A DNA stretch of 64,000 nt. Origin: Pristiophorus japonicus. Taxonomy: Eukaryota. The translations under genes and the position numbers were made by a program. The notes beneath the pieces were generated by a model that saw nothing but the letters and a program-made list of their open reading frames with translations, made no database searches and had not been told where the DNA came from. Positions 7,295-51,975 of this stretch are shown one piece after another (the stretch's first letter is position 1; every line of letters starts with the position of its first letter). The stretch spans positions 344,038,001-344,102,000 of the forward strand of contig NC_091977.1 in the NCBI RefSeq assembly GCF_044704955.1, read 5' to 3'.

Positions 7295-10200
7295 CTGGAT
7301 CATTGGCAGGACCGGAACCAATGTCCTAGGGGGAGTGTTTGCTAGTGCTGTTGGGGAGGAGTTAAACTAATATTGCAGGGGGATGGGAACCTATGCAGGG
7401 AGACAGAGGGAGACAAAAATGAGGCAAAAGCAAAAGACAGAAAGGAGATGAGGAAAAGTGGAGGGCAGAGAAACCCAAGGCAAAGAACAAAAAGGGCCAC
7501 TGTACAGCAAAATTCTAAAAGGACAAAGGGTGTTAAAAAAGCAAGCCTGAAGGCTTTGTGTCTTAATGCAAGGAGTATCCGCAATAAGGTGGATGAATTA
7601 ACTGTGCAAATAGATGTTAACAAATATGATGTGATTGGGATTACGGAGACGTAGCTCCAGGATGATCAGGGCTGGGAACTCAACATCCAGGGGTATTCAA
7701 CATTCAGGAAGGATAGAATAAAAGGAAAAGGAGGTAGGGTAGCATTGCTGGTTAAAGAGGAGATTAATGCAATAGTTAGGAAAGACATTAGCTTGGATGA
7801 TGTGGAATCTATATGGGTAGAGCTGCAGAACACTAAAGGGCAAAAATCGTTAGTGGGAATTGTGTACAGACCTCCAAACAGTAGTAGTGATGTTGGGGAG
7901 GGCATCAAACAGGAAATTAGGAGTACATGCAATAAAGGTAGAACAGTTATAATGGGTGACTTTAATATGCACATAGATTGGGCCAGCCAAACTGGAAGCA
8001 ATACGGTGGAGGAGGATTTCCTGGAGTGCATAAGGGATGGTTTTCTAGACCAATATGTCGAGGAACCAACTAGGGGGGAGGCCATCTTAGACTGGGTGTT
8101 GTGTAATGAGAGAGGATTAATTCGCAATCTCATTGTGCGAGGCTCCTTGGGGAAGAGTGACCATAATATGGTGGAATTCTGCATTAGGATGGAGAATGAA
8201 ACAGTTAATTCAGAGACCATGGTCCAGAAATTAAAGAAGGGTAACTTTGAAGGTATGAGGCATGAATTGGCTAAGATAGATTGGCTAATGATACTTAAGG
8301 GGTTGACTGTGGATTGGCAATGGCAGACATTTAGAGACCGCATGGATGAATTACAACAATTGTACATTCCTGTCTGGCGTAAAAATAAAAAAGGGAAGGT
8401 GGCTCAACCGTGGCTATCTCGGGAAATCAGGGATAGTATTAAAGCCAAGGAAATGGCATACAAATTGGCCAGAAATAGCAGCGAACCCGGGGACTGGGAG
8501 AAATTTAGAACTCAGCAGAGGAGGACAAAGGGTTTGATTAGGGCAGGGAAAATGGAGTACGAGAAGAAGCTTGCAGGGAACATTAAGGCGGATTGCAAAA
8601 GTTTCTATAGGTATGTAAAGAGAAAAAGGTTAGTAAAGACAAACGTAGGTCCCCTGCAGTCAGAATCAGGGGAAGTCATAACGGGGAACAAAGAAATGGC
8701 AGACCAATTGAACAAGTACTTTGGTTCAGTATTCACTAAGGAGGACACAAACAACCTTCCGGATATAAAAGTGGTCAGAGGGTCTAGTAAGGAGGAGGAA
8801 CTGAGGGAAATCTTTATTAGTCGGGAAATTGTGTTGGGGAAATTGGTGGGATTGAAGGCCGATAAATCCCCAGGGCCTGATGGACTGCATCCCAGAGTAC
8901 TTAAGGAGGTGGCCTTGGAAATAGCGGATGCATTGACAGTCATTTTCCAACATTCCATTGACTCTGGATCAGTTCCTATCGAGTGGAGGGTAGCCAATGT
9001 AACCCCACTTTTTAAAAAAGGAGGGAGAGAGAAAACAGGGAATTATAGACCGGTCAGCCTGACCTCAGTAGTGGGTAAAATGATGGAATCAATTATTAAG
9101 GATGTCATAGCAGCGCATTTGGAAAATGGTGACATGATAGGTCCAAGTCAGCATGGATTTGTGAAAGGGAGATCATGCTTGACAAATCTTCTGGAATTTT
9201 TTGAGGATGTTTCCAATAAAGTGGACAAAGGAGTACCAGTTGATGTGGTATATTTGGACTTTCAGAAGGCTTTCGACAAGGTGCCACACAGGAGATTAAT
9301 GTGCAAAGTTAAAGCACATGGGATTGGGGGTAGTGTGCTGACGTGGATTGAGAACTGGTTGTCAGACAGGAAGCAAAGAGTAGGAGTAAATGGGTACTTT
9401 TCGGAATGGCAGGCAGTGACTAGTGGGGTACCGCAGGGTTCTGTGCTGGGGCCCCAGTTGTTTACATTGTACATTAATGATTTAGACGAGGGGATTAAAT
9501 GTAGTATCTCCAAATTTGCGGATGACACTAAGTTGGGTGGCAGTGTGAGCTGCGAGGAGGATGCTATGAGGCTGCAGAGTGACTTGGATAGGTTAGGTGA
9601 GTGGGCAAATGCGTGGCAGATGAAGTATAATGTGGATAAATGTGAGGTTATCCACTTTGGTGGTAAAAACAGAGAGACAGACTATTATCTGAATGGTGAC
9701 AGATTAGGAAAAGGGAAGGTGCAACGAGACCTGGGTGTCATGGTACATCAGTCATTGAAGATTGGCATGCAGGTACAGCAGACGGTTAAGAAAGCAAATG
9801 GCATGTTGGCCTTCATAGCGAGGGGATTTGAGTACAGGGGCAGGGAGGTGTTGCTACAGTTGTACAGGGCCTTGGTGAGGCCACACCTGGAGTATTGTGT
9901 ACAGTTTTGGTCTCCTAACTTGAGGAAGGACATTCTTGCTATTGAGGGAGTGCAGCGAAGATTCACCAGACTGATTCCCGGGATGGTGGGACTGACCTAT
10001 CAAGAAAGACTGGATCAACTGGGCTTGTATTCACTGGAGTTCAGAAGAGTGAGAGGGGACCTCATAGAAACGTTTAAAATTCTGACGGGTTTGGACAGGT
10101 TGGATGCAGGAAGAATGTTCCCAATGTTGGGGAAGTCCAGAACCAGGGGTCACAGTCTAAGGATAAGGGGTAAGCCATTTAGGACCGAGATAAGGAGAAA

Positions 10201-10451
10201 CTTCTTCACCCAGAGAGTGGTGAACCTGTGGAATTCTCTACCACAGAAAGTAGTTGAGGCCAATTCACTAAATATATTCAAAAGGGAGTTAGATGAAGTC
10301 CTTACTACTTGGGGGATCAAGGGGTATGGCGAGAAAGCAGGAATGGGGTACTGAAGTTTCATGTTCAGCCATGAACTCATTGAATGGCGGTGCAGGCTAG
10401 AAGGGCTGAATGGCCTACTCCTGCACCTATTTTCTATGTTTCTATGTTTCT
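7295..10451 (+). mobile_element. Young 5'-truncated CR1 LINE (end of ORF1, ORF2, 3' tail)
   Basis: 14-bp TSD ATTGGTGAGCATGA (7281-7294 and 10452-10465); ORF1 end RTGTNVLGGVFASAVGEELN*; (TTTCTATG)n tail. Confidence 0.95.
7373..10354 (+). CDS. CR1 ORF2 (APE endonuclease plus reverse transcriptase), interrupted only by TAG at 7652-7654
   Basis: LNARSIRNK, GITET*, YRPP, MGDFN, SDH; RT motifs KSPGPDG, YLDFQKAFD, GVPQGSVLGP, FADD. The 869-aa ORF 7745-10354 is in frame with ORF 7373-7654. Confidence 0.9.
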
Positions 10452-12862: not shown

Positions 12863-13976
12863 GGGCCCAATTTTGGCCATGACTTGCATCAATTTTTTTG
12901 GAGTAAGTTTTTTCTGGCGTAAGTTTAAAAAAAATACAATTTTCCCCAAAATATTTGCTCCAGAGTAAGTCCGTTAGGTACGATCTTTTTTTTAGTTCAG
13001 TTTTTTTTTTCAAAAGGGGGCGTTCCCAGACACTTACGGCAGTTTTGGCCATTTATGCCATTTTGGCCAGCTAAAAGTTACTCTAAATCCACTTTGATCA
13101 GCATATGTGGCCAGCTCTGAAAAACCTTGTGGGCAGTTAACAAATCGGTGCAGGTAGGACCTGCAACAAGCACCAAGCAGCAAATATTCAATATAAAAGT
13201 TCAAATAACTACATAAAAATAGGGTAAACAATTGAACAACAATTAAAAAAAATTGTATTAAATCCTACCTTTAGTTGAAATCGGCCGGGGAAGGCAGCGG
13301 GTCGGGTCGGGAGAGTGGGGAGGGAGAGGAAAGGCTGGTCTCGGCAGCATCTTTATAAAGTAGAACTCAAACTGGTTTGTTGTTTGCCCCTCAGTTGACT
13401 TTCATAAAATGGGACTGCACATGGTCTTCATAGGCAGCTTGTCTGTTCTCTGGAAAGGTCCTCTGGCACACTGGACACTCGTAAACAAAGTGCTTCACAA
13501 CGTGCTGCTCGAAATCAGAGTCCTCCAGGTTGAGCATGAAGACGACCTCACACACTGGGCACTTTTGGCTGTCAATGATCTCCTCTTCGGTATCCTATGA
13601 ATTCCCCTTGCCATCCTGGCTCTGCACCAAGTCAATGCTTGCACCGGTCTGCGATCCTTCAATATCAGAGAGTGCCGCAGGCCACTCGGCCCGGGATAGG
13701 GACGGCGTGCTTCGGCCCCTCCCACACAGCGTCGGGCTGCGAGGAGCTACTGCACATGCGCGCACACTCGAGGTGCATGTGCAGAGGTCCCGGCACTGTT
13801 TTCAGCACCAGGACCTGGCTCCGCCCCCGAATCGAGTTGCCACGCTGCGCCACCATCGGGGAGAGGCTGGGGAGCGGCCAAAATGGGCCTGAAGATTTAT
13901 GCCGCTCTAATCGCTCCACAAAAGTGGCTGACCTTTGCTAAGTGCGCCAGAATTTGTACTGGCCAAAATTGGGCCC
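12863..13976 (-). mobile_element. Harbinger-type MITE carrying a captured host-gene fragment (Pack-type)
   Basis: Perfect 17-bp TIRs GGGCCCAATTTTGGCCA; both arms align in reverse to 26967-27791; TSD not preserved (AGT/ATC). Confidence 0.85.
13391..13678 (-). pseudogene. Captured C-terminal fragment of a CALCOCO2 (NDP52)/TAX1BP1-family gene: tandem UBZ-type C2H2 zinc fingers
   Basis: Minus-strand translation AALSDIEGSQTGASIDLVQSQDGKGNS*DTEEEIIDSQKCPVCEVVFMLNLEDSDFEQHVVKHFVYECPVCQRTFPENRQAAYEDHVQSHFMKVN*. Two CPxC..F..(F/Y)ExHVxxH units end at a stop; internal TAG at 13595-13597. Confidence 0.8.
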
Positions 13977-26290: not shown

Positions 26291-26966
26291 GAAGAATCAT
26301 ATCCACATCTTCTGCCTCCAGACACAGATTTCCTTTGTGGTCTCTAATAGGCCCCACTCTTTCTCTAGTTATCCTCTTGCTCTCAATGTATTTATAAAAC
26401 ATCTTTGGATTTTCCCTGATTTTACTTGCCAACATTCTTTCATGCTCTCTTTGCTTTCCTGATATCTTTTTTAATTACACCCCTGCGCTTCTTATACTCC
26501 TCTAGCATCTCTGCAGTATTGAAGTCTCGGAATCTGTCATCCAGTGGGGTGCTAGATTTGTTAGCCCCATCTTTTTTTTTATAAAGAGAACATGCTTGCT
26601 CTGTACTCTCAGGATCTCCTCCTTGAATGCCTCTCACTTCTCTGACACTGATTTACCATCAAGTAGCCGTTTCATATTCCCCTTGTCCAAATCCCATCTC
26701 AGCTTAGCGAAATTGGCTTTACCCCAATTGAGAACTTTTTTTCCTGGTCCACCTTTGTCCTTTTCCGTAACTGCCCTGAATCTTAATGAATTATGATCAC
26801 TAGCACCAAAATGCTCTCCCACTGAAGCCCCTTCATTCCCCAAAATCAAGTCCAGAATCGCCCCCTCCCTTGTTAGGCTTGTTTCATACTAGCTAAAGAA
26901 TTTCTACTGAATGCATTTTAGGAATTCTGCACGATACCATTCACACTGCTTTTTTTCCCAGTTAAT

Positions 26967-27791
26967 GGGCTCAAAATGGGCCCATGCCGATCTTTGGCGT
27001 ACTCACCTGAGTTGATCAGCTTTTCTACATTTCCAAGCGCGCCAAAAAAAGATGTCCTGACTTTGACCACTGTCCGGCCTCTTCCAGGTCTTCGTGCAGC
27101 GTGGCCAGTCGAGTCGGGGGCAGAGCCAGTGTCCCGCGCTGAAAACAGTGCTGGAACGTCTGCACATACGCGTTGGAGCAGTAGCTCCTTGCTCCCAGCA
27201 TCTCTGTGTGCATCCCGCCCCAATCCCAGGCCGAGTGGCCAAATATTAAACCGACCCAACTCTCTTGCCTCGTCACGGGCTTTTACCCTTGTGATATCGA
27301 AGTCACCCTCCTGAGAAATCGCGAGCCAATCACTGACACGGAATCCAGTGGCATTCTACTACTTGTATTTTTGTAGTTTAAGCTTCCATGAATGCTTCTG
27401 TTGTATATTAAATTAACGTTGCGGAAGTTTGTCATATAGCTGTTTGATCCTATTCACATTCCTTAGTCAAGTCATTAAGTTCTGCTGGCCTCCGATGTAC
27501 CTACCTGCGCTGATTTCTTCACTCTCCTCAAGGGTTTTCACAAGTGGCCACATATGCTGGCCTAAGTTAGTTTGGAGTAACTATTAACTGGCCAAAGTGG
27601 CTTAACTGGCCAAAATGGGCGTAGGTGGCTGGTAACGCCCCCTTTTGGAAAAGAAACAAAACTAAAATAATCCTAACCAACTCACTTACACTGGCAGAAA
27701 TTGAATGTGTAAAATGTGGATTTTTAAGATACTCCAGAAAAATCAAGTTACTCCAAAAAAAACGGAGCAACTCCTGGCCAATTTTGAGCCC
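26967..27791 (+). mobile_element. Harbinger-type MITE carrying a captured MHC class I-like fragment (Pack-type)
   Basis: TIRs GGGCTCAAAAT(G/T)GGCC; 3-bp TSD AAT (26964-26966 and 27792-27794); arms homologous to 12863-13976. Confidence 0.9.
27242..27358 (+). pseudogene. Captured Ig C1-set fragment, most like an MHC class I alpha-3 domain
   Basis: Translates NIKPTQLSCLVTGFYPCDIEVTLLRNREPITDTESSGIL: the C1-set signature LxCxxxGFYPxDIxVT followed by a ..SGIL(P)-type strand. Confidence 0.8.
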
Positions 27792-28257
27792 AATATTAGG
27801 GTAATTGAAATCTCCCATTATTACAGCTCTATAGTTTTTGCACTTTGCAGCAATTTGTTGTTTTATCTCCCTCTGACTGGGTGCCTATAGTACACTCCCA
27901 GTAGTGTGATTGGCCCTTTTTTGTTCTTCAATTCAACCCATATGGCCTTGTTTGATGACCCCTCTAACATATCATCCCTTCTCAAACCTGTAATTGATTA
28001 TTTAATTAATACTGCGACCCCCCCTCCTTTTTTTAACCCCTCTTTATCCCATTCGAAAACCCTGTAACCAGGAATGTTGAGCTGCCATACCTGTCCCCCT
28101 TTCAGCCATGTCTCAGTAATGGCTATAATATTGTACTGCCAAGTGTCTATCTATACACTCAGTTCATCTGCCTTATTCCCTATATTCCTTGCATTGAAGT
28201 ATATGCTATTTTGTAGTGCCAAACTCCCTTGTCTATTTTCCAGCCCCTGTTTCCTCT

Positions 28258-28735
28258 GTCACCAAGTCCCGTTCACCCATGACCACTGTACTCGCTGACC
28301 TACATTGGCTCCCGGTGAAGCAACACCTTGATTTCAAAATTTTCATCCATGTTTTTAAATCCCTCCATAACCACACCCCTTCTTATCTCTGTAATCTCCT
28401 TCAGCTCCACAACCCCCCATCCCCGAGGTATCTGCGCTCCTCAAATTCTGCCCTTTTGAACATCCCTGATTTTAATTGCTTAACCATTGGTGGCTGTGCC
28501 CTCTGTTGCCTATGCCCTAAGCTCTGGAATTCCTTACCTAAACCTCTCCACCTCTCTACCTCTCCTCCTTTTAAGACGCTCCTTAAAATCTACCTCTCTG
28601 AACAAGCTTTTGGTCTCCTGCCCTAATTTATCCTTATGTGGCTTGGTGTCAATTTTTTTGTTTTATAATAATACTCCTGTGAAGTGTCTTGGGATGTTTT
28701 ACAATGTTAAAGGTGCTAAATAAGTAATTGTATTT
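28258..28735 (+). mobile_element. L2 LINE 3' end
   Basis: VLADLHWLPV..FKI..LRSS..PKLWNSLP; L2-type tail ..TTAAAGGTGCTAAATAA. Confidence 0.85.
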
Positions 28736-43430: not shown

Positions 43431-46400
43431 TGATACGTCCTTACTACACAGTATAAATGCACACGAGGCCCATGCTTGAGAGAAGGTCAGTCTGTGACCT
43501 GTCCTTTATTCCTCAGCACTCAAGTGATGAAGGTGGGTGGAGCTTCCCCTTTTATACCTGAAGGTCCAGGTTAGGAGTGTCTCCCACCTAGTGGTCAGTG
43601 TTCTCACGGTGTACAACTTAGGTCAGTTTATACATGGGTTACAATGCTGGTTGAATACATGACATCACCTCCCCCCCAAAAGTCTTATTGGGATCACAGG
43701 TTGAGTCTCTCTGGTGGTTTACGCTCCCTTGTAGAGCGCCTGAGTTGGGGCTCCGGTTGTTGGGCGCTGGCCTGAGTGTCTGCTGTTTGCGGTGCCTCAG
43801 GCCTGTCCGGACTGCTCCCAGTGACTGGGCTCTCCTCCCTTTGGTTCCGGTGTTCGGTCACCTGTGGTGGAGTGAACTCTATATCGTGTTCTTCCTCTGC
43901 TTCTTTTATGGGGTTGCTGAACCTCCTTTTTGTTTGATCCACATGTTTGCGGCAGATTTGTCCATTGGTAAGTTTAACGACCAGAATCCTATTTCCCTCT
44001 TTGGCAACCACAGTGCCTGCGAGCCATTTGGGCCCTGCAGCGTAGTTGAGGACAAAAACAGGATCATTTACATCAATACATCGCGCTCTCGCATTCCTGT
44101 CATGGTAGTGATATTGTGACTGGCGCCTGCTCTCGACAATTTCTTTCATGGTGAGGTGTATAAGGGATAATCGGGTTTTGAGCGTCCTTTTCATTGGCAG
44201 CTCTGCGGGTGGAACCCCTGTGAGCGAGTGTGGTCGGGATCTATAGGCCAACAGGAGGCGTGTTAAGCGCCTTTGTAGGGAACCCCCTTGGAATCTGAGC
44301 ATCCCCTGTTTGATTATCTGCGCTGCTCGTTCTGCCTGGCCGTTTGAGGCCGGCTTGAACGCTGCCGTTCTGACATGGTTAATTCCATTGCCTGCCATGA
44401 AGTCCTGGAATTCAGTGCTTGTGAAGCACGGGCCATTGTCGCTGACCAAGATGTCCGGTAGACCGTGGGCGGCGAACATTGCCCGTAGACTTTCTACCGT
44501 GGCAGAGGATGTGCTTGAATTTAAAATGTCACACTCGATCCATTCGGAGTAGGCGTCTACGACAACCAAAAACATTTTTCCCATGAAAGGACCTGCGTAG
44601 TCCACATGGATGCGTGACCAAGGCTTGGCGGGCCATGGCCAGGGGCTAAGGGGGGCTTCCCTGGGCGCATTGCCCAGCTGGGCACACGTGTTGCACCTAC
44701 GAACACAAAGTTCCAGATCTGCGTCTATCCCTGGCCACCAAACGTGTGACCTGGCAATTGCCTTCATCGTGACAATGACCGGGTGCCCATTGTGGAGTTC
44801 TCTGATGAACACCTCTCTGCCCATCTGGGGCATGACTACGCGGTTTCCCCACAGTAGGCAATCGGCCTGAATCGAGACTTCATCCTTGCGCATGTGAAAC
44901 GGTTTAAATTTCTCAGCGCATGCCCTGTACGTGGCTGCCCAGTCCTCATTCAGGACACATTTCTTGACTAGAGACAATAGCGGGTCTCTATTTGTCCAGA
45001 CTTTAATCTGACGGGCTGTCACGGGTGAGCCTTCGCTTCCGAAAGCTTCAACAGCCATGACCATCCCAGCAGCATGGTCGGTAGCCCCCTCAGTGGTGGC
45101 TAGTGGGAGCCTGCTGAGTGCATCGGGGCAGTTTTCAGTGCCCGGTCTGTGCCGAATTGTAGTCATAGGCGGCTAACGTGAGTGCCCAGCTCTGTATGCG
45201 GGCCGATGCGTTTGCATTTATGGCCTTGTTGTCGGCCAAAAGGGACGTTAGGGGTTTGTGATCTGTCTCCAGCTCAAATTTCCTGCCAAACAGGTACTGG
45301 TGCATTTTCTTTACCGCATATACACATGCGAGCGCCTCCTTTTCTACCATCCCGTAGCCCCTTTCTGCCTGGGACAGACTCCTGGAGGCATAAGCTACCG
45401 GCTGTAACTGACCCTTGGCATTGACATGCTGCAACACACACCCGACACCATAGGACGATGCATCGCACGTTAACACAAGTTTCTTACATGGGTCATATAG
45501 CGTTAACAGATTATTGGAACATAACAAATTGCATGCTCTATTAAAAGCCCTTTCCAGGCTGTCCCCCCAGACCCATTCGCGACCTTTGCGTAGGAGCACG
45601 TGTAGCGGCTCTAGCAGCGTGCTCAATTTGGGAAGAAAGTTACCAAAATAGTTCAGGACCCCCAGGAGCCAACGCAGCTCCGTCGTGTTACGGGGTCTGG
45701 GTGCTCTCTGGATCGCTTCCGTCTTGGATGCAGTAGGGCTGATCCCGTCTGCTGCTACCCTCATCCCCAGGAATTCTACCTCTGGAGATAGGAAGACGCA
45801 TTTCGCCTTTTTCAGTCGCAGACCTACCCGGTCCAGTCTGCGTAGCACCTCCTCCAGGTTGTGGAGGTGTTCTTCAGTATCGTAACCCGTAATGAGGATG
45901 TCGTCCTGAAAAACCACCGTCCCTGGAATCGACTTGAGGAGGCTTTCCATATTTCGTTGGAAGATCGCGGCGGCCGAGTGAATCCCGAACGGACATCTGT
46001 TGTACGCAAACAACCCCTTGTGTGTCGTGATGGTGGTCAGCTTCTTCGACTCACTCGCCAGCTTCCTGGGTCATGTAAGCTGAGGTCAGGTCCAATTTTG
46101 AAAAAAGTTTGCCACCGGATAGCGTCGCAAAGAGGTCCTCCGCTCTCGGTAGTGGGTACTGATCTTGGAGTGACACCCGATTGATGGTGGCCTTGTAATC
46201 ACCACAGATCCTGACCGACCCATCCGCCTTGAGCACCGGCACAATCAGGCTCGCCCAGTCACTGAATTCGACTGGCAAGATGATGCCTTCCCTCAACAGG
46301 CGGTCCAATTCGCCTTCTATCTTTTCCCGCATCACGTACGGCACCGCTCTGGCCTTGTACTGGTCTGGCGTCCGGGTTTATGTGAATCACTACCTTGGCC

Positions 46401-47545
46401 CCCATGAAAGTGCCAATGCCGGGTTGAAATAATGAGTCAAATTTGTCCAGGATCTGTGAGCATGATACTCGCTCCATAGAGGAAATTGCATTGACATCGC
46501 CCCATTTCCAGTTCATGACAGCAAGCCAACTCCTCCCCAGTAGTTTGGGACCGTCCCCTGGGACAATCCAGAGTGGCAACCTGTTCTCCGAATCTTTGTG
46601 GGTCACGACTACCGTGGCGCTGCCTAGCACCGGAATGATCTGCTTTGTGTAAGTCCGTAGCTGTGCGTCAATCGTCGATAATTTTGGCCTCCTGGCCTTG
46701 GATGCCCACAACTTTTTGAACTGTTTGATACCCATCAGGGACTGGCTGGCACCCGTGTCTAATTCCATTGATATTGGGATGCCATTGAGGAGCACTTTCA
46801 TCATTATCGGTGGCGTCCTGGTGTATGAACTGTATACGTGCTCCACATGAACTCGCTGAACTTCAGCTTCCAGCGATTTCCCCCAGTGACCATTTCTGCA
46901 ATTTCTGCAGGTATTTTGCTCATCTCTGCAAACTCCTGAGTGTGTGCTTCCACGCCTCCAGCATGGGTTGCGGTTTGAAACAAAAGGTCCCTTGCCAGTC
47001 GATCGTCCCTGACTGCCCCTGTTATTGTCCTTGAGTGCACCATTAACAGGTGTTGATGGCCCCATTACTGGCCGCATTGTCCCTTGCAATGGCGTGAATC
47101 GCTGTTCAGCTTGCCATTGTCTCTGTCGAACTCCCCCTCTTGGTTCGACTACATGTTGGGGCATGCCTGACTGCCCTTGTCTGCCTGGAGAACTGTGTGC
47201 TGCTTTAACAATGTTGAATCTCTGTCCCAACCATTCCTTAACACAGTACCTCTCGTCTGTTCTGCTAGTGGCCATGCTCGCGTGGTTTAAATCCCAGTTT
47301 CTTGTCGCCTTTGATACGTCCTTACTACACAGTATAAATGCACACGAGGCCCTTGCTTGAGAGAAGGTCAGTCTGTGACCTGTCCTTTATTCCTTTGCAC
47401 TCAAGTGATGAAGGTGGGTGGAGCTTCCCCTTTTATACCTGAAGGTCCAGGTTAGGAGCGTCTCCCACCTAGTGGTCAGTGTTCTCACGGTGTACAACTT
47501 AGGTCAGTTTATACATGGGTTACAATGCTGGTTGAATACATGACA
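43431..47545 (-). mobile_element. Young Ty3/Gypsy LTR retrotransposon, 4115 bp, gag largely missing
   Basis: 234-bp LTRs (43431-43664 and 47312-47545) with TG..CA ends and 4 mismatches; 5-bp TSD ACCCT; PPT GGGGGGGAGGTGA; PBS-like AGGCGACAAG. Confidence 0.95.
43694..47275 (-). pseudogene. Gypsy gag remnant-pol polyprotein (PR-RT-RNase H-IN) with about 3 frameshifts
   Basis: LDTGAS, ICGDYK, FQDDILI, DASSYGVG, HNGH..C..C, HVDYAGP, SDNGPCF, SNGQAER; ORF pieces 47275-46259, 46344-46051, 46013-45135 and 45166-43694. Confidence 0.9.
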
Positions 47546-48475: not shown

Positions 48476-51400
48476 TATAAGAACATAAGAATTAGGAACA
48501 GGAGTAGGCCATCTAGCCCCTCGAGCCTGGTCCGCCATTCAACAAGATCATGGCTGATCTGGCCGTAGACTCAGCTCCACTTACCCGCCCGCTCCCCGTA
48601 ACCCTTAATTCCCTTATTGGTTAAAAATCTATCTATCTGTGACTTGAATATATTCAATGAGCTAGTCTCAACTGCTTCCTTGGGCAGAGAATTCCACAGA
48701 TTCACAACCCTCTGGGAGAAGAAATTCCTTCTCAACTCGGTTTTAAATTGGCTCCCCCGTATTTTGAGGCTGTGCCCCCTAGTTCTAGTCTCCCCGACCA
48801 GTGGAAACAACCTCTCTGCCTCTCTCTATCTTGTCTATCCCTTTCATTATTTTAAATGTTTCTATAAGATCACCCCTCATTCTTCTGAACTCCAATGAGT
48901 AAAGACCCAGTCTACTCAATCTATCATCATAAGGTAACCCCCTCATCTCCGGAATCAGCCTCGTGAATCGTCTCTCTACCCCCTCCAAAGCTAGTATATC
49001 CTTCCTTAAGTAAGGTGACCAAAACTGCACGCAGTACTCCAGGTGCGGCCTCACCAAACCCTGTACAGTTGCAGTAGGACCTCCCTGCTTTTGTACTCCA
49101 TCCCTGTCGCAATGAAGGCCAACATTCCATTCGCCTTCCTGATTACCTGCTGCACCTGCAAACTAACTTTTTGGGGCTCAGTGGTTAGAGCTCTCACCTC
49201 TGAGTCAGAAGGTTGTAGGTTCAAATCCAGGGGTGAGCACATTAAACAAAAATCTATGCTGACACTCCTAGAGAAAGCACTGCACTGTCGGAGGCGCTAT
49301 ATTTCCAAAAAGAGTTTCATGCACAAGGACCCCCAGGTCCCTCTGCACCGCAGCATGTTGTAATTTCTCCCCATTCAAATAATATTCCCTTTTACTGTTT
49401 TTTTTCCCCAAGGTGGATGACCTCACATTTTTCGACATTGTATTCCATCTGCCAAAACTTAGCCCATTCGCTTAACCTATCGAAATCTCTTTGCAGCCTC
49501 TCTGTGTCCTCTACACAACCCGCTTTCCCACTAATCTTTCTGTCATCTGCAAATTTGGTTACACTACACTCTGTGCCCTCTTCCAAGTCATCTATGTATA
49601 TTGTAAACAGTTGTGGTCCCAGCACCGAGCCCTGTGGCACAGCACTAACCACTGATTTCCAACCCGAAAAGGACCCATTTATCCCGACTCTCTGCTTTCT
49701 GTTCGCCAGCCAATTCTCTATCCATGCTAATACATTTCCTCTGACTCCGCGTACCTTTATCTTCTGCAGTAACCTTTTGTGTGGCACCTTATCGAATGCC
49801 TTTTGGAAATCTAAATACACCACATCCATCGGTACACCTCTATCCACCATGCTCGTTATATCCTCAAAGAATTCCAGTAAATTAGTTAAACATGATTTCC
49901 CCTTCATGAATCCATGTTGCGTCTGCTTGATTGCACTATTCCTATCTAGATGTCCCGCTATTTCTTCCTTAATGATAGCTTCAAGCATTTTCCCCACTAC
50001 AGATGTTAAACTAACCGGCCTATAGTTAACTGCCTTTTGTCTGCCCCCTTTTTTAAACAGAGGCGTTACATTAGCTGCTTTCCAATCCGATGGTACCTCC
50101 CCAGAGTCCAGTGAATTTTGGTAGATTAAAACGAATACATCTGCTATAACTTCCGCCATCTGTTTTAATACCCTGGGATGCATTTCATGCGGACCAGGGA
50201 ACTTGTCTACCTTGAGTCCCATTAGCCTATCCAGCACTACCCCCCTAGTGATAGTGATTATCTCAAGGTCCTCCCTTCCCACATTCCCATGACCAGCAAT
50301 TTTTGGCATGGTTTTTGTGTCTTCCACTGTGAAGACTGAAGCAAAATAATTGTTTACGGTCTCAGCCATTTCCACATTTCCCATTATTAAATCCCCCTTC
50401 TCATCTTCTAAGGGACCAACATTTACTTTAGTAACTCTTTTCCATTTTATATATCGGTAAAAGCTTTTACTATCTGTTTTTATGTTTTGCGCAAGTTTAC
50501 TTTCGTAATCTATCTTTCCTTTCTTTATTGCTTTCTTAGTCATTCTTTGCTGTCGTTTAAAATTTTCCCAATCTTCTAGTTTCCCACTAACCTTGGCCAC
50601 CTTATATGCATTGGTTTTTATTTTGAAACTCTCCTTTATTTCCTTGGTTATCCACGGCTGGTTATCCCTTCTCTTACCGCCCTTCTTTTTCACTGGAATA
50701 TATTTTTGTTGAGCACTATGAAAGAGCTCCTTAAAAGTCCTCCACTGTTCCTCAATTGTGCCACCGTTTAGTCTGTGTTTCCAGTCTACTTTAGCCAACT
50801 CTGCCCTCATCCCACTGTAGTCCCCTTTGTTTAAGCATAGTATGCTCGTTTGAGACACTACTTCCTCACCCTCAATCTGTATTACAAATTCAACCATACT
50901 GTGATCACTCATTCCGAGAGGATCTTTTACTTGGAGATCGTTTATTATTCCTGTCTCATTACACAGGACCAGATTTAAGATAGCTTGCTCCCTTGTAGGT
51001 TCTGTAACATACTGTTCTAAGAAACAATCCCGTATGCATTCTATGAATTCCTCCTCAAGGCTACCCCGTGCGATTTGATTTGACCAATCGATATGTAGGT
51101 TAAAATCCCCCATGATTACTGCCATTCCTTTTTCACATGCCTCCATTATTCCCTTGATTATTGCCCGCCCCACCGTGAAGTTATTATTTGGGGGCCTATA
51201 AACTATGCCCACCAGTGACTTTTTCCCCTTACTATCTCTAATCTCCACCCACAATGATTCAACAGTTTGTTCATTAGAACCAATATCGTCTCTCACAACT
51301 GCCCTGATATCATCCTTTATTAACAGAGCTACCCCACCTCCTTTCCCTTCTTGTCTATCTTTCCGAATTGTCAGATACCCCTCTATGTTTAATTCCCAGT

Positions 51401-51975
51401 CTTGGCTCCCCTGCAACCACGTTTCTGTAATGGCCTACAAATCATACCCATTTGTAATGATTTGTGCCGTAAAGTCATTTACTTTATTTTGAATGCTGCG
51501 TGCGTTTAGGTAGAGTGTTTTAATACTAGTTTTTAAACCATGATTTTTAGTTTTGACCCCTCCTGCAGCCCCTTTATATTCATACATATTGTCCCTTCCT
51601 ATCACTTTGTGGTTTACACTTACCCCAGTGCTATTCTGCTCTGTTGCCTCCTGCCTTTTGCATTCTTTCTTGGGGTCCTGTTCATCTGAGCTCTCACCCA
51701 CTCTAACTAGCTCAGAGCTCTCTCCTGGGTTCCGAATACTCCTTGCATTGAGGCACCGAGCTTTCATGCTTGCCTTTTTTATTACCCTTTGACCCTTTAG
51801 AATTTTGCTGTACAGTGGCCCTTTTTGTTTTTTGCCTTGGGTTTCTCTGCCTTCCACTTTTACTCATCTCCTTTCTGTCTTTTGCTTTTGTCTCCATTTT
51901 GTTTCCCTCTGTCTCCCTGCATTGGTTCCCATCCCCCTGCCATATTAGTTTAACTGCTCCCCAATAGCACTAGCA
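48476..51975 (-). mobile_element. Young chimeric CR1 LINE (ORF1 end plus ORF2; longest ORF 49392-51416)
   Basis: EN motifs YRPP, MGDFN, SDH; RT motifs YLDFQKAFD, PQGSVLGP, FADD; two LNARSI motifs at the N-terminus; rc tail CATAAGAA. Confidence 0.9.
49173..49314 (+). mobile_element. Short (about 140 bp) tRNA-headed SINE, internally deleted relative of the 34862-37410 SINE
   Basis: A box GGCTCAGTGGTTAG, B box GGTTCAAATCC, GCTGACACTCC..GCACTGTCGGAGG joined directly to GCGCTATAT; interrupts CR1 ORF2. Confidence 0.75.

What the first reader, a model, noticed from the sequence alone, without database searches (positions are those of the whole stretch)
27241..27360. MHC class I alpha-3-like exon fragment inside a MITE
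Seen: 27242-27358 reads NIKPTQLSCLVTGFYPCDIEVTLLRNREPITDTESSGIL, with no start codon or splice sites, inside a TIR element with an intact AAT TSD that sits in a CR1. Known: LxCxxxGFYPxDIxVT is the Ig C1-set B-C strand signature, and a following SGILP-type strand fits MHC class I alpha-3. TGT could be CpG decay of CGT (GFYPRD). Inference: a transposon has moved a piece of an MHC-like gene, which could yield dispersed pseudo-MHC hits, gene-conversion donors or small RNAs. It is absent from the ORF track.
Basis: partly seen in the sequence, partly recalled or inferred. Interest (0 to 1): 0.85.

Follow-up and report, generated by a model that had tools for sequence, protein, structure and literature searches.

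The report
Shark MHC class I fragment in transposon
A 120-base piece of a shark MHC class I gene (the first half of its alpha-3 domain exon) sits as dead cargo inside a small cut-and-paste transposon that landed in an old LINE: a real case of gene-fragment capture, a known kind that is rarely documented in vertebrates.

Summary
Window 27242-27358 (+) translates exactly as reported. It is an Ig C1-set fragment (Pfam E=2e-7), and its closest relatives are all shark MHC class I heavy chains (34/39 identical to Pristiophorus japonicus, 33/39 to Squalus acanthias). A first lead to beta-2-microglobulin, raised by the motif 'DIEVxLLxN', was rejected: shark UAA-type class I alpha-3 domains carry the same Leu-for-Trp.

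The homologous stretch is 27240-27359. It lies in the middle of an exon and has no other MHC exon within 64 kb. It sits in the variable slot of an 825-bp TIR element (26967-27791; TIR 15/16; AAT duplicated on both sides). Removing that element restores the endonuclease reading frame of a LINE.

A second family copy (12863-13975) has a TAX1BP1-like zinc-finger fragment after the same left boundary, GGCCGAGTGGCC.

Public runs of the same organism show a highly covered, probably expressed, parent that differs at three listed positions: CGC for TGT at 27290/27292 and G at 27320. Most DNA contigs share two of this copy's letters, which suggests amplification after one capture.

The scan has four other unchecked notes of MHC class I fragments in Harbinger MITEs in this genome.

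Verdict: a Pack-type transduplicate with no sign of function. It is a new member of a known kind, of moderate interest.

The parts
26964..26966 (.). Left copy of the 3-bp target-site duplication (AAT)
   Evidence: Paralogous LINE copies in public contigs read CCCAGTT followed by AATATT, with a single AAT (table 5c).
26967..26982 (+). Left terminal inverted repeat GGGCTCAAAATGGGCC
26967..27239 (+). Left arm of the non-autonomous TIR element. The part from about 27095 onward is shared with copy B and is highly repeated in the genome.
   Evidence: Alignment to copy B. Contig depth in X1 is 31k-160k for 27095-27176, but only about 230-320 for 26972-27053.
27229..27240 (+). GGCCGAGTGGCC, the last bases shared with copy B. 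The cargo starts here in both copies. The final C is also the first base shared with the parent gene, giving a 1-bp overlap.
   Evidence: The loose end GTGAACAAGGCGT before 27240 in X11 shows the parent continuing differently upstream.
27240..27359 (+). Cargo: an internal 120-bp piece of the alpha-3 (C1-set) exon of a UAA/UBA-type shark MHC class I gene. It covers the B strand, its Cys, the C strand and the start of C'/D. It lacks the first ~14 codons and the second half of the exon, including the second Cys.
   Evidence: Contigs of a second organism without the transposon family cover 27240-27353 at about 88% identity. CpG o/e is 1.05.
27290..27292 (+). TGT (Cys) codon. The parent reads CGC (Arg) and most genomic DNA contigs read CGT. 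These are C-to-T changes at two CpG sites.
   Evidence: table 3. X11: 185451 of 185451 depth has C at 27290, and 185380 of 185451 has C at 27292. X1: 286 of 385 has C at 27290, but only 85 of 385 has C at 27292.
27320..27320 (+). C (codon CGC, Arg) where the highly covered parent has G (GGC, Gly of LLRNG). Most DNA contig depth shares the C.
   Evidence: table 3. X11: 39524 of 39524 has G. X1: only 95 of 319 has G.
27360..27494 (+). AT-rich 'tail' between the cargo and the right arm. It is not MHC-derived. It is itself a high-copy repeat in the genome and is probably a canonical part of this element subfamily. It is absent from copy B.
   Evidence: X1 depth is 63k-132k, against about 360-430 over the cargo. 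No significant similarity to copy B.
27495..27791 (+). Right arm, 75% identical to copy B, ending in the right TIR (27776-27791).
   Evidence: X1 depth is 160k-585k.
27792..27794 (.). Right copy of the target-site duplication (AAT)
26300..26966 (-). Downstream part of the interrupted, decayed LINE (EEP endonuclease C-terminal half and linker)
27795..28500 (-). Upstream part of the interrupted LINE (EEP endonuclease N-terminal half, ending in GDFNYPNI)
12863..13975 (-). Second copy of the same TIR family (perfect 16-bp TIR GGGCCCAATTTTGGCC, no recognisable TSD). After the same left boundary it carries a TAX1BP1-like tandem UBZ zinc-finger C-terminus with stop codon (13394-13594) and 3'UTR-like sequence.
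   Evidence: Pfam PF18112 E=3e-11. PDB TAX1BP1 5AAS E=2.5e-11.

Best explanation
Window 27240-27359 is a non-functional, transposon-borne duplicate of the middle of the alpha-3 exon of a shark MHC class I heavy-chain gene. The parent is of the UAA/UBA type, whose alpha-3 has 'EVTLLRNG' with Leu in place of the usual C-strand Trp. The fragment occupies the variable internal slot of an 825-bp non-autonomous TIR element with a 3-bp TSD (Harbinger-like) that inserted into the endonuclease-coding region of a LINE.

Shown: the identity of the fragment; the element's TIRs and TSD; the precise interruption of the LINE; a second family member with a different host-gene fragment after the same left boundary; and a highly covered, probably expressed, parent gene in the same organism that differs at three listed positions, two of them CpG transitions.

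Inferred: (1) The fragment was copied into the element by template switching during break or gap repair at a recurrent breakpoint just after GGCCGAGTGGCC, with 1 bp of overlap at the 5' junction. This is the mechanism proposed for Pack-MULE, Pack-CACTA and Pack-TIR elements. (2) The chimeric element was then moved and amplified in trans by a transposase encoded elsewhere. (3) This copy has since begun to decay (CGT to TGT).

The fragment lacks a start codon, convincing splice sites, the first ~14 codons and the whole second half of the domain, including the second Ig cysteine. It therefore cannot make a folded domain and most likely does nothing.
For: Identity:
- Pfam C1-set, E=2e-7.
- The best single-stretch hits in 1.84 billion proteins are shark proteins at 81-84% identity, carrying PF00129 MHC_I plus C1-set.
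- Among 90%-cluster relatives the fragment is 34/39 identical to Pristiophorus japonicus and 33/39 to Squalus acanthias Q8HWH7.
- Q8HWH7 is closest to the nurse shark classical class I structure 6LUP (E=1.5e-96), whose alpha-3 also has Leu/Phe for Trp.

Element:
- TIR 15/16 and AAT on both sides.
- The LINE EEP frame and motif GDFNYPNINW are restored on removal, and blastx runs through the junction.
- Paralogous LINE copies carry a single AAT (table 5c).

Cargo slot:
- Copy B shares both arms but holds a TAX1BP1-like UBZ fragment after the same left boundary.

Not an in-situ pseudogene:
- tblastn with seven shark class I proteins hits only 27242-27355 in 64 kb.

Parent and age:
- In runs X11 and X6 of the same organism the cargo bins are 30-60x (X11) or about equal (X6) to the arm bins, whereas in DNA run X1 the arms are about 1000x the cargo.
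- All that depth reads CGC at 27290-27292 and G at 27320. The parent continues upstream as GTGAACAAGGCGT, i.e. VNKA(S)NIK.
- CpG o/e is 1.05 in the cargo against 0.25-0.28 in the LINE flanks.

Amplification:
- Most X1 DNA depth shares this copy's T at 27292 and C at 27320, unlike the parent.
- Contigs 5 and 6 extend from the arm (27178 and 27210) into the cargo at about 90% identity.

Lineage:
- Organism B has the LINE and the MHC exon (27240-27353, about 88% identity) but no arms.
Against: - The TSD is AAT, not the TWA typical of PIF/Harbinger. No transposase partner was found in the window, so the superfamily is unproven.
- Copy number after capture rests on Logan contig depths, which the tool warns are not copy numbers. 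It also rests on two short bridging contigs whose arm portion (31-62 bp) could be a forced alignment.
- The other MITE-borne MHC copies in this genome are known only from unchecked first-stage notes.
- Runs X6 and X11 are not on record as RNA. That they are transcriptomes is inferred from the depth pattern.
- 'Only three differences from the parent' relies on table 3, which lists only the best-supported differences.
- The capture mechanism itself is inferred from the literature (PMC8277862, PMC6379663), not from this sequence.
Confidence: 0.82

Rival explanations
1. In-situ gap filling. The TIR element inserted here empty, and the MHC piece was copied into it later at this locus, as in the transposition-independent filling proposed for single-copy animal Pack-TIRs. 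On this reading the transposon never moved the MHC fragment.
For: Tan et al. (PMC8277862) conclude that most animal Pack-TIRs are single-copy and arise this way. From this window alone the order of events cannot be read. The cargo is very young (CpG o/e 1.05).
Against: Most DNA contig depth over the cargo shares two derived letters with this copy (T at 27292, C at 27320) that the highly covered parent lacks. Two contigs run from arm into cargo at about 90% identity, so they are other loci. Four other first-stage notes report MHC class I fragments in Harbinger MITEs elsewhere in this genome (unchecked).
Confidence: 0.08
2. Relic of a local MHC class I pseudogene. The 120 bp would be what is left of an exon that was once here, with repeats inserted around it.
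For: None beyond the presence of the fragment.
Against: No other MHC exon is detectable in 64 kb. The fragment is bounded on both sides by sequence shared with another copy of the TIR family. The whole unit lies inside TIRs and a TSD that interrupt a LINE ORF cleanly. The window is otherwise LINEs and an LTR element.
Confidence: 0.02
3. The fragment derives from beta-2-microglobulin or another C1-set gene (Ig or TCR constant, class II) rather than from class I alpha-3.
For: In the PDB search, beta-2-microglobulin and IgE/IgM constant domains score as well as nurse shark class I (30-33 bits). Human B2M shares DIEVDLLKNGE.
Against: Against shark sequences the top 14 matches by identity (74-87%) are the Leu-Leu ('LLRNG/LLKN') class I heavy chains (the rest of the list is a second class I-like group with Trp); those scanned carry PF00129, the others have it precomputed. 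The parent's upstream letters read VNKAS, as in those alpha-3 domains. The Leu-for-Trp feature is shared by the nurse shark class I structure 6LUP.
Confidence: 0.02
4. The fragment has been co-opted, either as an exonised piece of a transcript or as a source of antisense or small RNAs against the MHC class I gene.
For: The 56-aa ORF 27206-27376 is open. An AG lies at 27227-27228. Element arms appear in the probable RNA runs at moderate depth. Tan et al. report that an appreciable share of Pack-TIRs are transcribed as chimeras.
Against: In X11 the bin just upstream of the cargo (27177-27217) has depth 10, against 218,000 over the cargo, and all cargo depth carries the parent's letters, not this copy's. 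There is no start codon in context, no convincing donor, and a truncated domain. The locus is a LINE graveyard.
Confidence: 0.04

Closest known systems
Pack-TIR / Pack-TYPE transposons (Pack-MULE, Pack-CACTA in plants; Pack-TIRs in metazoans, Tan et al. 2021, PMC8277862; Catoni et al. 2019, PMC6379663; Gisby & Catoni 2022, PMC8903248)
   Same: A non-autonomous TIR element with a TSD whose interior is a duplicated piece of a host gene. The cargo is GC-richer than its surroundings. The parent gene is still present and probably expressed. There are signs of several copies.
   Different: The host is a shark, a group that paper does not mention, and the cargo is an MHC class I exon piece. Two family members carry different cargo after one and the same left boundary (GGCCGAGTGGCC); I know of no report of this for Pack elements (from memory, not searched). 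Harbinger is not mentioned in the metazoan survey (0 occurrences).
PIF/Harbinger MITEs (Tourist-like)
   Same: A 3-bp TSD, short G-rich TIRs beginning GGGC/GGCC, no coding capacity, and very high copy number of the arms in the genome.
   Different: The TSD here is AAT rather than TAA/TTA. At 825 bp it is at the upper end for a MITE. No cognate transposase was identified.
Shark MHC class I heavy chains of the UAA/UBA type (nurse shark structure 6LUP; Squalus acanthias Q8HWH7)
   Same: 33-34 of 39 residues are identical, including LSCLVTGFYP.DIEVTLLRN and TDTES.GIL. The Leu-for-Trp C strand is shared.
   Different: Only 40 codons of one exon are present. Alpha-1, alpha-2, the rest of alpha-3, TM and tail are absent. 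Arg became Cys and Gly became Arg.
Turmoil-1 of C. elegans (PMC2572040), an early animal example of transduplication
   Same: A DNA transposon that has incorporated host protein-coding fragments.
   Different: There the fragments lie in the terminal repeats of an autonomous element. Here the fragment is in the interior of a small non-autonomous one.

Membership tests
Ig C1-set domain (PF07654) | Match to the family HMM above the curated cut-off | tested here: met
   31.7 bits against a cut-off of 21, E=2e-7, profile positions 13-46 of 86.
Ig C1-set domain (PF07654) | Both conserved cysteines (B and F strands) and a full-length ~86-residue domain | tested here: not met
   Only the B-strand Cys (LSC) is present. 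Homology stops at SSGIL (27359), before strands D-G. It is a fragment, not a domain.
MHC class I heavy chain, alpha-3 exon (shark UAA/UBA type) | Nearest relatives are proteins with the MHC_I (alpha-1/alpha-2) domain, and the match falls in their alpha-3 | tested here: met
   identity of 74-87% to 14 shark class I proteins, at residues about 208-246 of proteins about 350 aa long. The best of these, Q8HWH7, is closest to 6LUP.
MHC class I heavy chain, alpha-3 exon (shark UAA/UBA type) | Parent sequence present, and probably expressed, in the same organism | tested here: met
   contigs of X11 and X6 cover 27240-27359 at very high depth with 3 listed differences. That these runs are RNA is inferred.
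MHC class I gene (functional locus) | Alpha-1, alpha-2, TM and cytoplasmic exons in the neighbourhood | tested here: not met
   tblastn of seven class I proteins finds nothing else in the window.
Beta-2-microglobulin | Closest relatives are ~100-120-aa single C1-set proteins | tested here: not met
   No such protein is among the best identity matches. The PDB B2M hit (domain score 23.6 bits) is generic C1-set similarity.
PIF/Harbinger-type MITE | Terminal inverted repeats | tested here: met
   A 16-bp TIR with 15/16 matching. Copy B has 16/16.
PIF/Harbinger-type MITE | 3-bp target-site duplication | tested here: met
   AAT on both sides. The empty site is confirmed by LINE frame restoration and by paralogous LINE copies.
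PIF/Harbinger-type MITE | TSD of consensus TWA (TAA/TTA) | tested here: not met
   The TSD is AAT. Copy B has no recognisable TSD.
PIF/Harbinger-type MITE | Termini shared with an autonomous element encoding a DDE_Tnp_4 transposase and a Myb-like protein | not testable with these tools
   No such ORF is among the ten longest ORFs of the window. The rest of the genome is not searchable here.
Pack-TIR / Pack-TYPE transposon | Non-autonomous TIR element whose internal region is a duplicate of host genic sequence with a parent elsewhere | tested here: met
Pack-TIR / Pack-TYPE transposon | The chimeric element itself has transposed (same junctions at several loci with different TSDs) | tested here: inconclusive
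   Shared derived letters in most DNA contig depth and two arm-to-cargo contigs at about 90% identity point that way. Other loci are known only from unchecked notes.

The most novel reading that the evidence does not exclude
This element family may be an unusually efficient, site-specific gene-fragment trap. On this reading it repeatedly acquires pieces of highly expressed mRNAs (MHC class I, TAX1BP1-like) at one fixed internal breakpoint, possibly from cDNA, and then amplifies them. That would scatter tens of near-identical MHC class I alpha-3 pieces through a shark genome, where they could act as ectopic gene-conversion donors or as sources of antisense or pi-RNAs against the class I gene.
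Probability: 0.07. Interest if true: 0.75.

Novelty: new member of a known kind. Interest (0 to 1): 0.4.

Why it matters
Gene-fragment capture by cut-and-paste transposons is well documented in plants. In animals it is rare, and multicopy cases are very few (PMC8277862). Here a shark TIR family carries a piece of a probably highly expressed antigen-presentation gene, and a second member carries a different gene after the same left breakpoint. This gives a concrete vertebrate system for asking how capture happens.

There are two practical consequences. Dispersed class I alpha-3 pieces can create false MHC hits, chimeric gene models and mapping artefacts in shark genome annotation. A Heterodontus RefSeq model that fuses LINE-like sequence to a class I alpha-3 turned up, but whether a transposon is involved there was not tested. 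The fragments are also potential, untested partners for ectopic recombination with MHC genes. The individual fragment studied here is, on present evidence, inert.

Tried and rejected
1. Beta-2-microglobulin origin. The PDB search put B2M fusions on top, and the motif DIEVxLLxN looked B2M-like. I rejected it once shark class I sequences were compared.
2. 'Non-classical' lineage. I first took the parent for non-classical from the NCBI names. The best relative, Q8HWH7, is very close to the classical nurse shark structure, and it appears to keep the conserved peptide-terminus residues on reading the alignment (not tested further). I therefore leave it as 'UAA/UBA type'. The two papers that define the shark lineages (PMC7002201, PMC8454915) are not held.
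3. The tail 27360-27494 as MHC 3'UTR or as a diverged part of copy B. There is no significant similarity to copy B. Its DNA depth is about 300x the cargo's, and its depth in the probable RNA runs is tiny compared with the cargo.
4. tRNA- or snRNA-like origin of the left arm, suggested because GGCCGAGTGG resembles a tRNA D-arm. ARAGORN and Rfam found nothing.
5. Upstream extension of the homology (27188-27241) suggested by one tblastn alignment. It adds only about 3 identities in 18 residues, and the region is shared with copy B, so I take it as chance.
6. Short-ORF relatives carrying the arm-cargo junction. The search for homologous proteins with the 56-aa ORF found no candidate. This says little.
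7. The search of earlier findings by sequence was blank.
The parent locus DNA and the Heterodontus loci could not be fetched, so no nucleotide alignment to a parent gene was made.
9. Literature search for Harbinger gene capture in sharks found nothing relevant.

Full report
**Observation**

The frame stays open from 27206 to 27376 as a 56-aa GTG ORF. Only the stated part carries signal.

- Pfam recognises an Ig C1-set fragment: 31.7 bits against a cut-off of 21, E=2e-7, profile positions 13-46 of 86.
- A HMMER scan of 1.84 billion representative proteins returned 129 hits. The single-stretch hits with the highest identity (81-84%, E down to 1e-10) are shark proteins.

The signal is not a chance motif.

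**What gene it comes from**

The PDB search first pointed to beta-2-microglobulin. Human B2M has DIEVDLLKNGE, and B2M fusions topped the list. IgE/IgM constant domains and nurse shark class I (6LUP) scored about the same, at 30-33 bits. That only shows generic C1-set similarity. The comparison with shark sequences settled the question:

- The high-identity hits P0023, P0026 and others carry Pfam MHC_I (alpha-1/alpha-2) plus C1-set. NCBI names them as class I chains of Heterodontus francisci.
- A second search, seeded with the alpha-3 region of one of them, brought in the 90%-cluster relatives.
- Local alignment of the peptide to all of them gave 34/39 identities to a Pristiophorus japonicus class I protein (…SVNKASNIKPTQLSCLVTGFYPRDIEVTLLRNGKRITDTESTGILPNHEGTYQ…), 33/39 to Squalus acanthias Q8HWH7, and 31/37 to Heterodontus XP_067865201.
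- The top 14 matches are the class I chains with Leu-Leu after 'EVT', in place of the usual Trp.
- Q8HWH7 is closest to the classical nurse shark class I structure 6LUP (E=1.5e-96). The alpha-3 of 6LUP reads EVNLFRD, so Leu/Phe for Trp is a feature of shark UAA-type class I, not of B2M alone.

I therefore call the parent 'UAA/UBA type' and leave classical versus non-classical open. The papers that define the shark lineages were not available. A review notes that UBA derives from UAA (PMC12562908).

**Extent of the fragment**

'NIK' is part of the parent sequence (ASNIKPTQL in the two best relatives). Public contigs of the same organism continue upstream of 27240 as GTGAACAAGGCGT. With the CA at 27240-27241 this reads VNKAS, then NIK. 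Downstream, homology ends after ATTCTAC at 27359, where the relatives continue with PNHDGTYQ.

The piece is thus 120 bp, 27240-27359, from the interior of the exon. It lacks about 14 codons at the exon's start and the whole second half, including the second Ig cysteine. tblastn with seven shark class I proteins finds nothing else in the 64-kb window. The window's long ORFs are LINE and LTR-retrotransposon genes.

**The carrier**

- TIRs: GGGCTCAAAATGGGCC at 26967-26982 and its reverse complement with one mismatch at 27776-27791.
- TSD: AAT stands immediately outside both ends.
- Empty site: deleting the element and one AAT makes the minus strand read …AVIMGDFNYPNINWEKKQ…. A blastx alignment to two intact LINE ORFs of the same window (EEP endonuclease plus RT) runs unbroken through the junction.
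- Paralogous LINE copies in public contigs read CCCAGTT followed directly by AATATT, with a single AAT (table 5c).

The element is therefore a real insertion with a 3-bp TSD into a LINE. I did not test whether that LINE is CR1 rather than L2.

The 3-bp TSD and G-rich TIR fit PIF/Harbinger. AAT does not fit the TWA consensus, and no cognate transposase is in the window, so the superfamily is likely but unproven. Rfam and ARAGORN find no RNA gene in the element.

**The cargo slot**

A self-comparison of the window found a second family member at 12863-13975 on the minus strand. It has a perfect 16-bp TIR.

- It shares the left arm up to …GGCCGAGTGGCC.
- It shares the right arm from CCTACCTGC… onward, at about 75% identity.
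- Its interior is entirely different. That interior encodes a TAX1BP1-like tandem UBZ zinc-finger C-terminus with its stop codon (Pfam PF18112 E=3e-11; PDB 5AAS E=2.5e-11).

The MHC piece begins at the last C of the same dodecamer. This is the architecture of Pack-type (transduplicating) TIR elements. Two different host fragments start at the same internal base, and the first-stage scan noted this independently (s1-874693).

**Evidence from public runs (Logan contigs only)**

Organism A, DNA run X1:
- The right arm (160k-585k summed contig depth), the GC-rich part of the left arm (31k-160k) and the AT-rich tail 27360-27504 (63k-132k) are very high copy.
- The cargo bins are low, at about 360-430.
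- The tail is therefore transposon or repeat sequence, not MHC. It also shows no similarity to copy B.

Organism B, run X5:
- It holds the LINE flanks.
- It holds two contigs over 27240-27353 at about 88% identity, one of them continuing upstream into unlike sequence.
- It holds nothing at all of either arm.
- In that species the exon exists without the transposon family.

Organism A, runs X11 and X6 (type not on record):
- The pattern is inverted. The cargo bins reach 218,000 (X11) and 3,700 (X6), while the bin just upstream has 10 and 48.
- I read these runs as transcriptomes in which the parent class I gene is highly expressed. This is an inference.
- All of that depth reads C at 27290, C at 27292 and G at 27320. 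The parent therefore has CGC (Arg) and GGC (Gly) where this copy has TGT (Cys) and CGC (Arg).
- Both T's sit at former CpGs (CGCG).
- No other difference was listed across the deeply covered part. The table shows only the best-supported differences.

The cargo's CpG o/e is 1.05, against 0.25-0.28 in the LINE flanks. This agrees with a young duplicate.

**Has the chimera moved?**

In DNA run X1 most depth over the cargo carries T at 27292 (300 of 385) and C at 27320 (224 of 319), like this copy and unlike the parent. Most of it carries C at 27290 (286 of 385, in 13 contigs).

The simplest reading is a set of genomic copies descended from one capture that had CGT…CGC. This copy later mutated CGT to TGT. 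Two X1 contigs also run from the left arm (27178 and 27210) into the cargo at about 90% identity.

Contig depth is not copy number, and the arm portions of those contigs are short. I rate 'amplified after capture' as likely but not shown. Four other first-stage notes report '(spliced) MHC class I fragment inside a Harbinger MITE' elsewhere in this genome (s1-874478, s1-877184, s1-876478, s1-874499). If they are right, this copy may be a short derivative of a longer cDNA-like cargo.

**Mechanism**

Shown:
- A host exon piece lies inside a TIR/TSD-bounded non-autonomous element.
- A sister element carries different cargo after the same left breakpoint.
- A parent gene is retained in the same organism and is probably expressed.
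- Element and parent share 1 bp at the 5' junction.

Inferred:
- Capture was by template switching during repair of a break inside the element, as in the gap-filling or FoSTeST models for Pack-TIRs (PMC8277862; PMC6379663).
- Mobilisation was then by a transposase acting in trans.

Why the break recurs after GGCCGAGTGGCC is unexplained.

The fragment has no start codon in context, no convincing splice donor, an in-frame stop at 27374-27376 and only half a domain. I expect no protein function. In the probable RNA runs, none of the listed cargo depth carries this copy's letters.

**Comparison with what is known, and verdict**

Pack-MULE, Pack-CACTA and Pack-TYPE elements are well known in plants (PMC8903248). 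Tan et al. found 370 Pack-TIRs in animals and very few multicopy cases (PMC8277862). That paper mentions neither sharks nor Harbinger. My search for Harbinger gene capture in sharks found nothing relevant.

This is a new member of a known kind. The fragment itself is inert on present evidence. The family-level behaviour (a fixed breakpoint, several cargos, possible cDNA origin) is the more interesting question and needs the whole genome.

**Limits**

- No nucleotide alignment to a parent locus was possible.
- The species is coded in the run tables. By protein similarity it is a shark, probably a squalomorph.

Noticed in passing
window 12863-13975 (-), cargo 13394-13594: A second member of the same TIR family carries a TAX1BP1-like tandem UBZ zinc-finger C-terminus with stop codon and 3'UTR-like sequence. 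There is an in-frame stop just upstream (…GKGNS*DTEEE…). Both UBZ fingers are contiguous, which would mean a spliced (cDNA) source if they lie in separate exons in the parent gene. This was not tested.
   Followed up: partly
window 27229-27240 and 13677-13688: In both family copies the foreign insert starts immediately after the same dodecamer, GGCCGAGTGGCC (GGCC-GAGT-GGCC). A related motif, AGTGGCCACATATGCTG, sits in the right arm (27543-27559). This points to a recurrent internal breakpoint of unknown cause.
   Followed up: partly
window 27360-27494: The AT-rich stretch between the MHC piece and the right arm is itself very high copy in the genome's DNA run but is absent from copy B. It is either a canonical part of one subfamily or another repeat. 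Its origin is unresolved.
   Followed up: partly
window 26972-27053: The outer ~100 bp of this element's left end are rare in the genome's contigs (depth about 230-320), although the inner left arm and the whole right arm are abundant. Left subterminal regions of the family seem heterogeneous. Copy B also differs there and has an extra inner TIR-like motif at 13874-13889.
   Followed up: no
protein P0013 (Heterodontus francisci XP_067865201.1, 'CD1d2-like'): This RefSeq model fuses a LINE-ORF2-like N-terminus (…REAKREYEKRLTANVKGNPKAFFRHLNT) to a class I alpha-3, TM and tail. It looks like a chimeric annotation of a dispersed class I fragment next to a repeat. This is the kind of annotation artefact such fragments can cause.
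   Followed up: no
window 43694-47275 (-), 7745-10354 (+), 49392-51416 (-): The window is a repeat landscape: an LTR retrotransposon with protease, RT/RNase H and integrase ORFs, and two LINE ORF2s with long open frames (869 and 674 aa). No host gene was seen among the ten longest ORFs.
   Followed up: partly
run X5 (organism B): A second, related organism shares the LINE family and the class I exon but shows no trace of the TIR family's arms at 80% likeness or above. The family therefore seems lineage-specific or recently expanded in the window's species.
   Followed up: no
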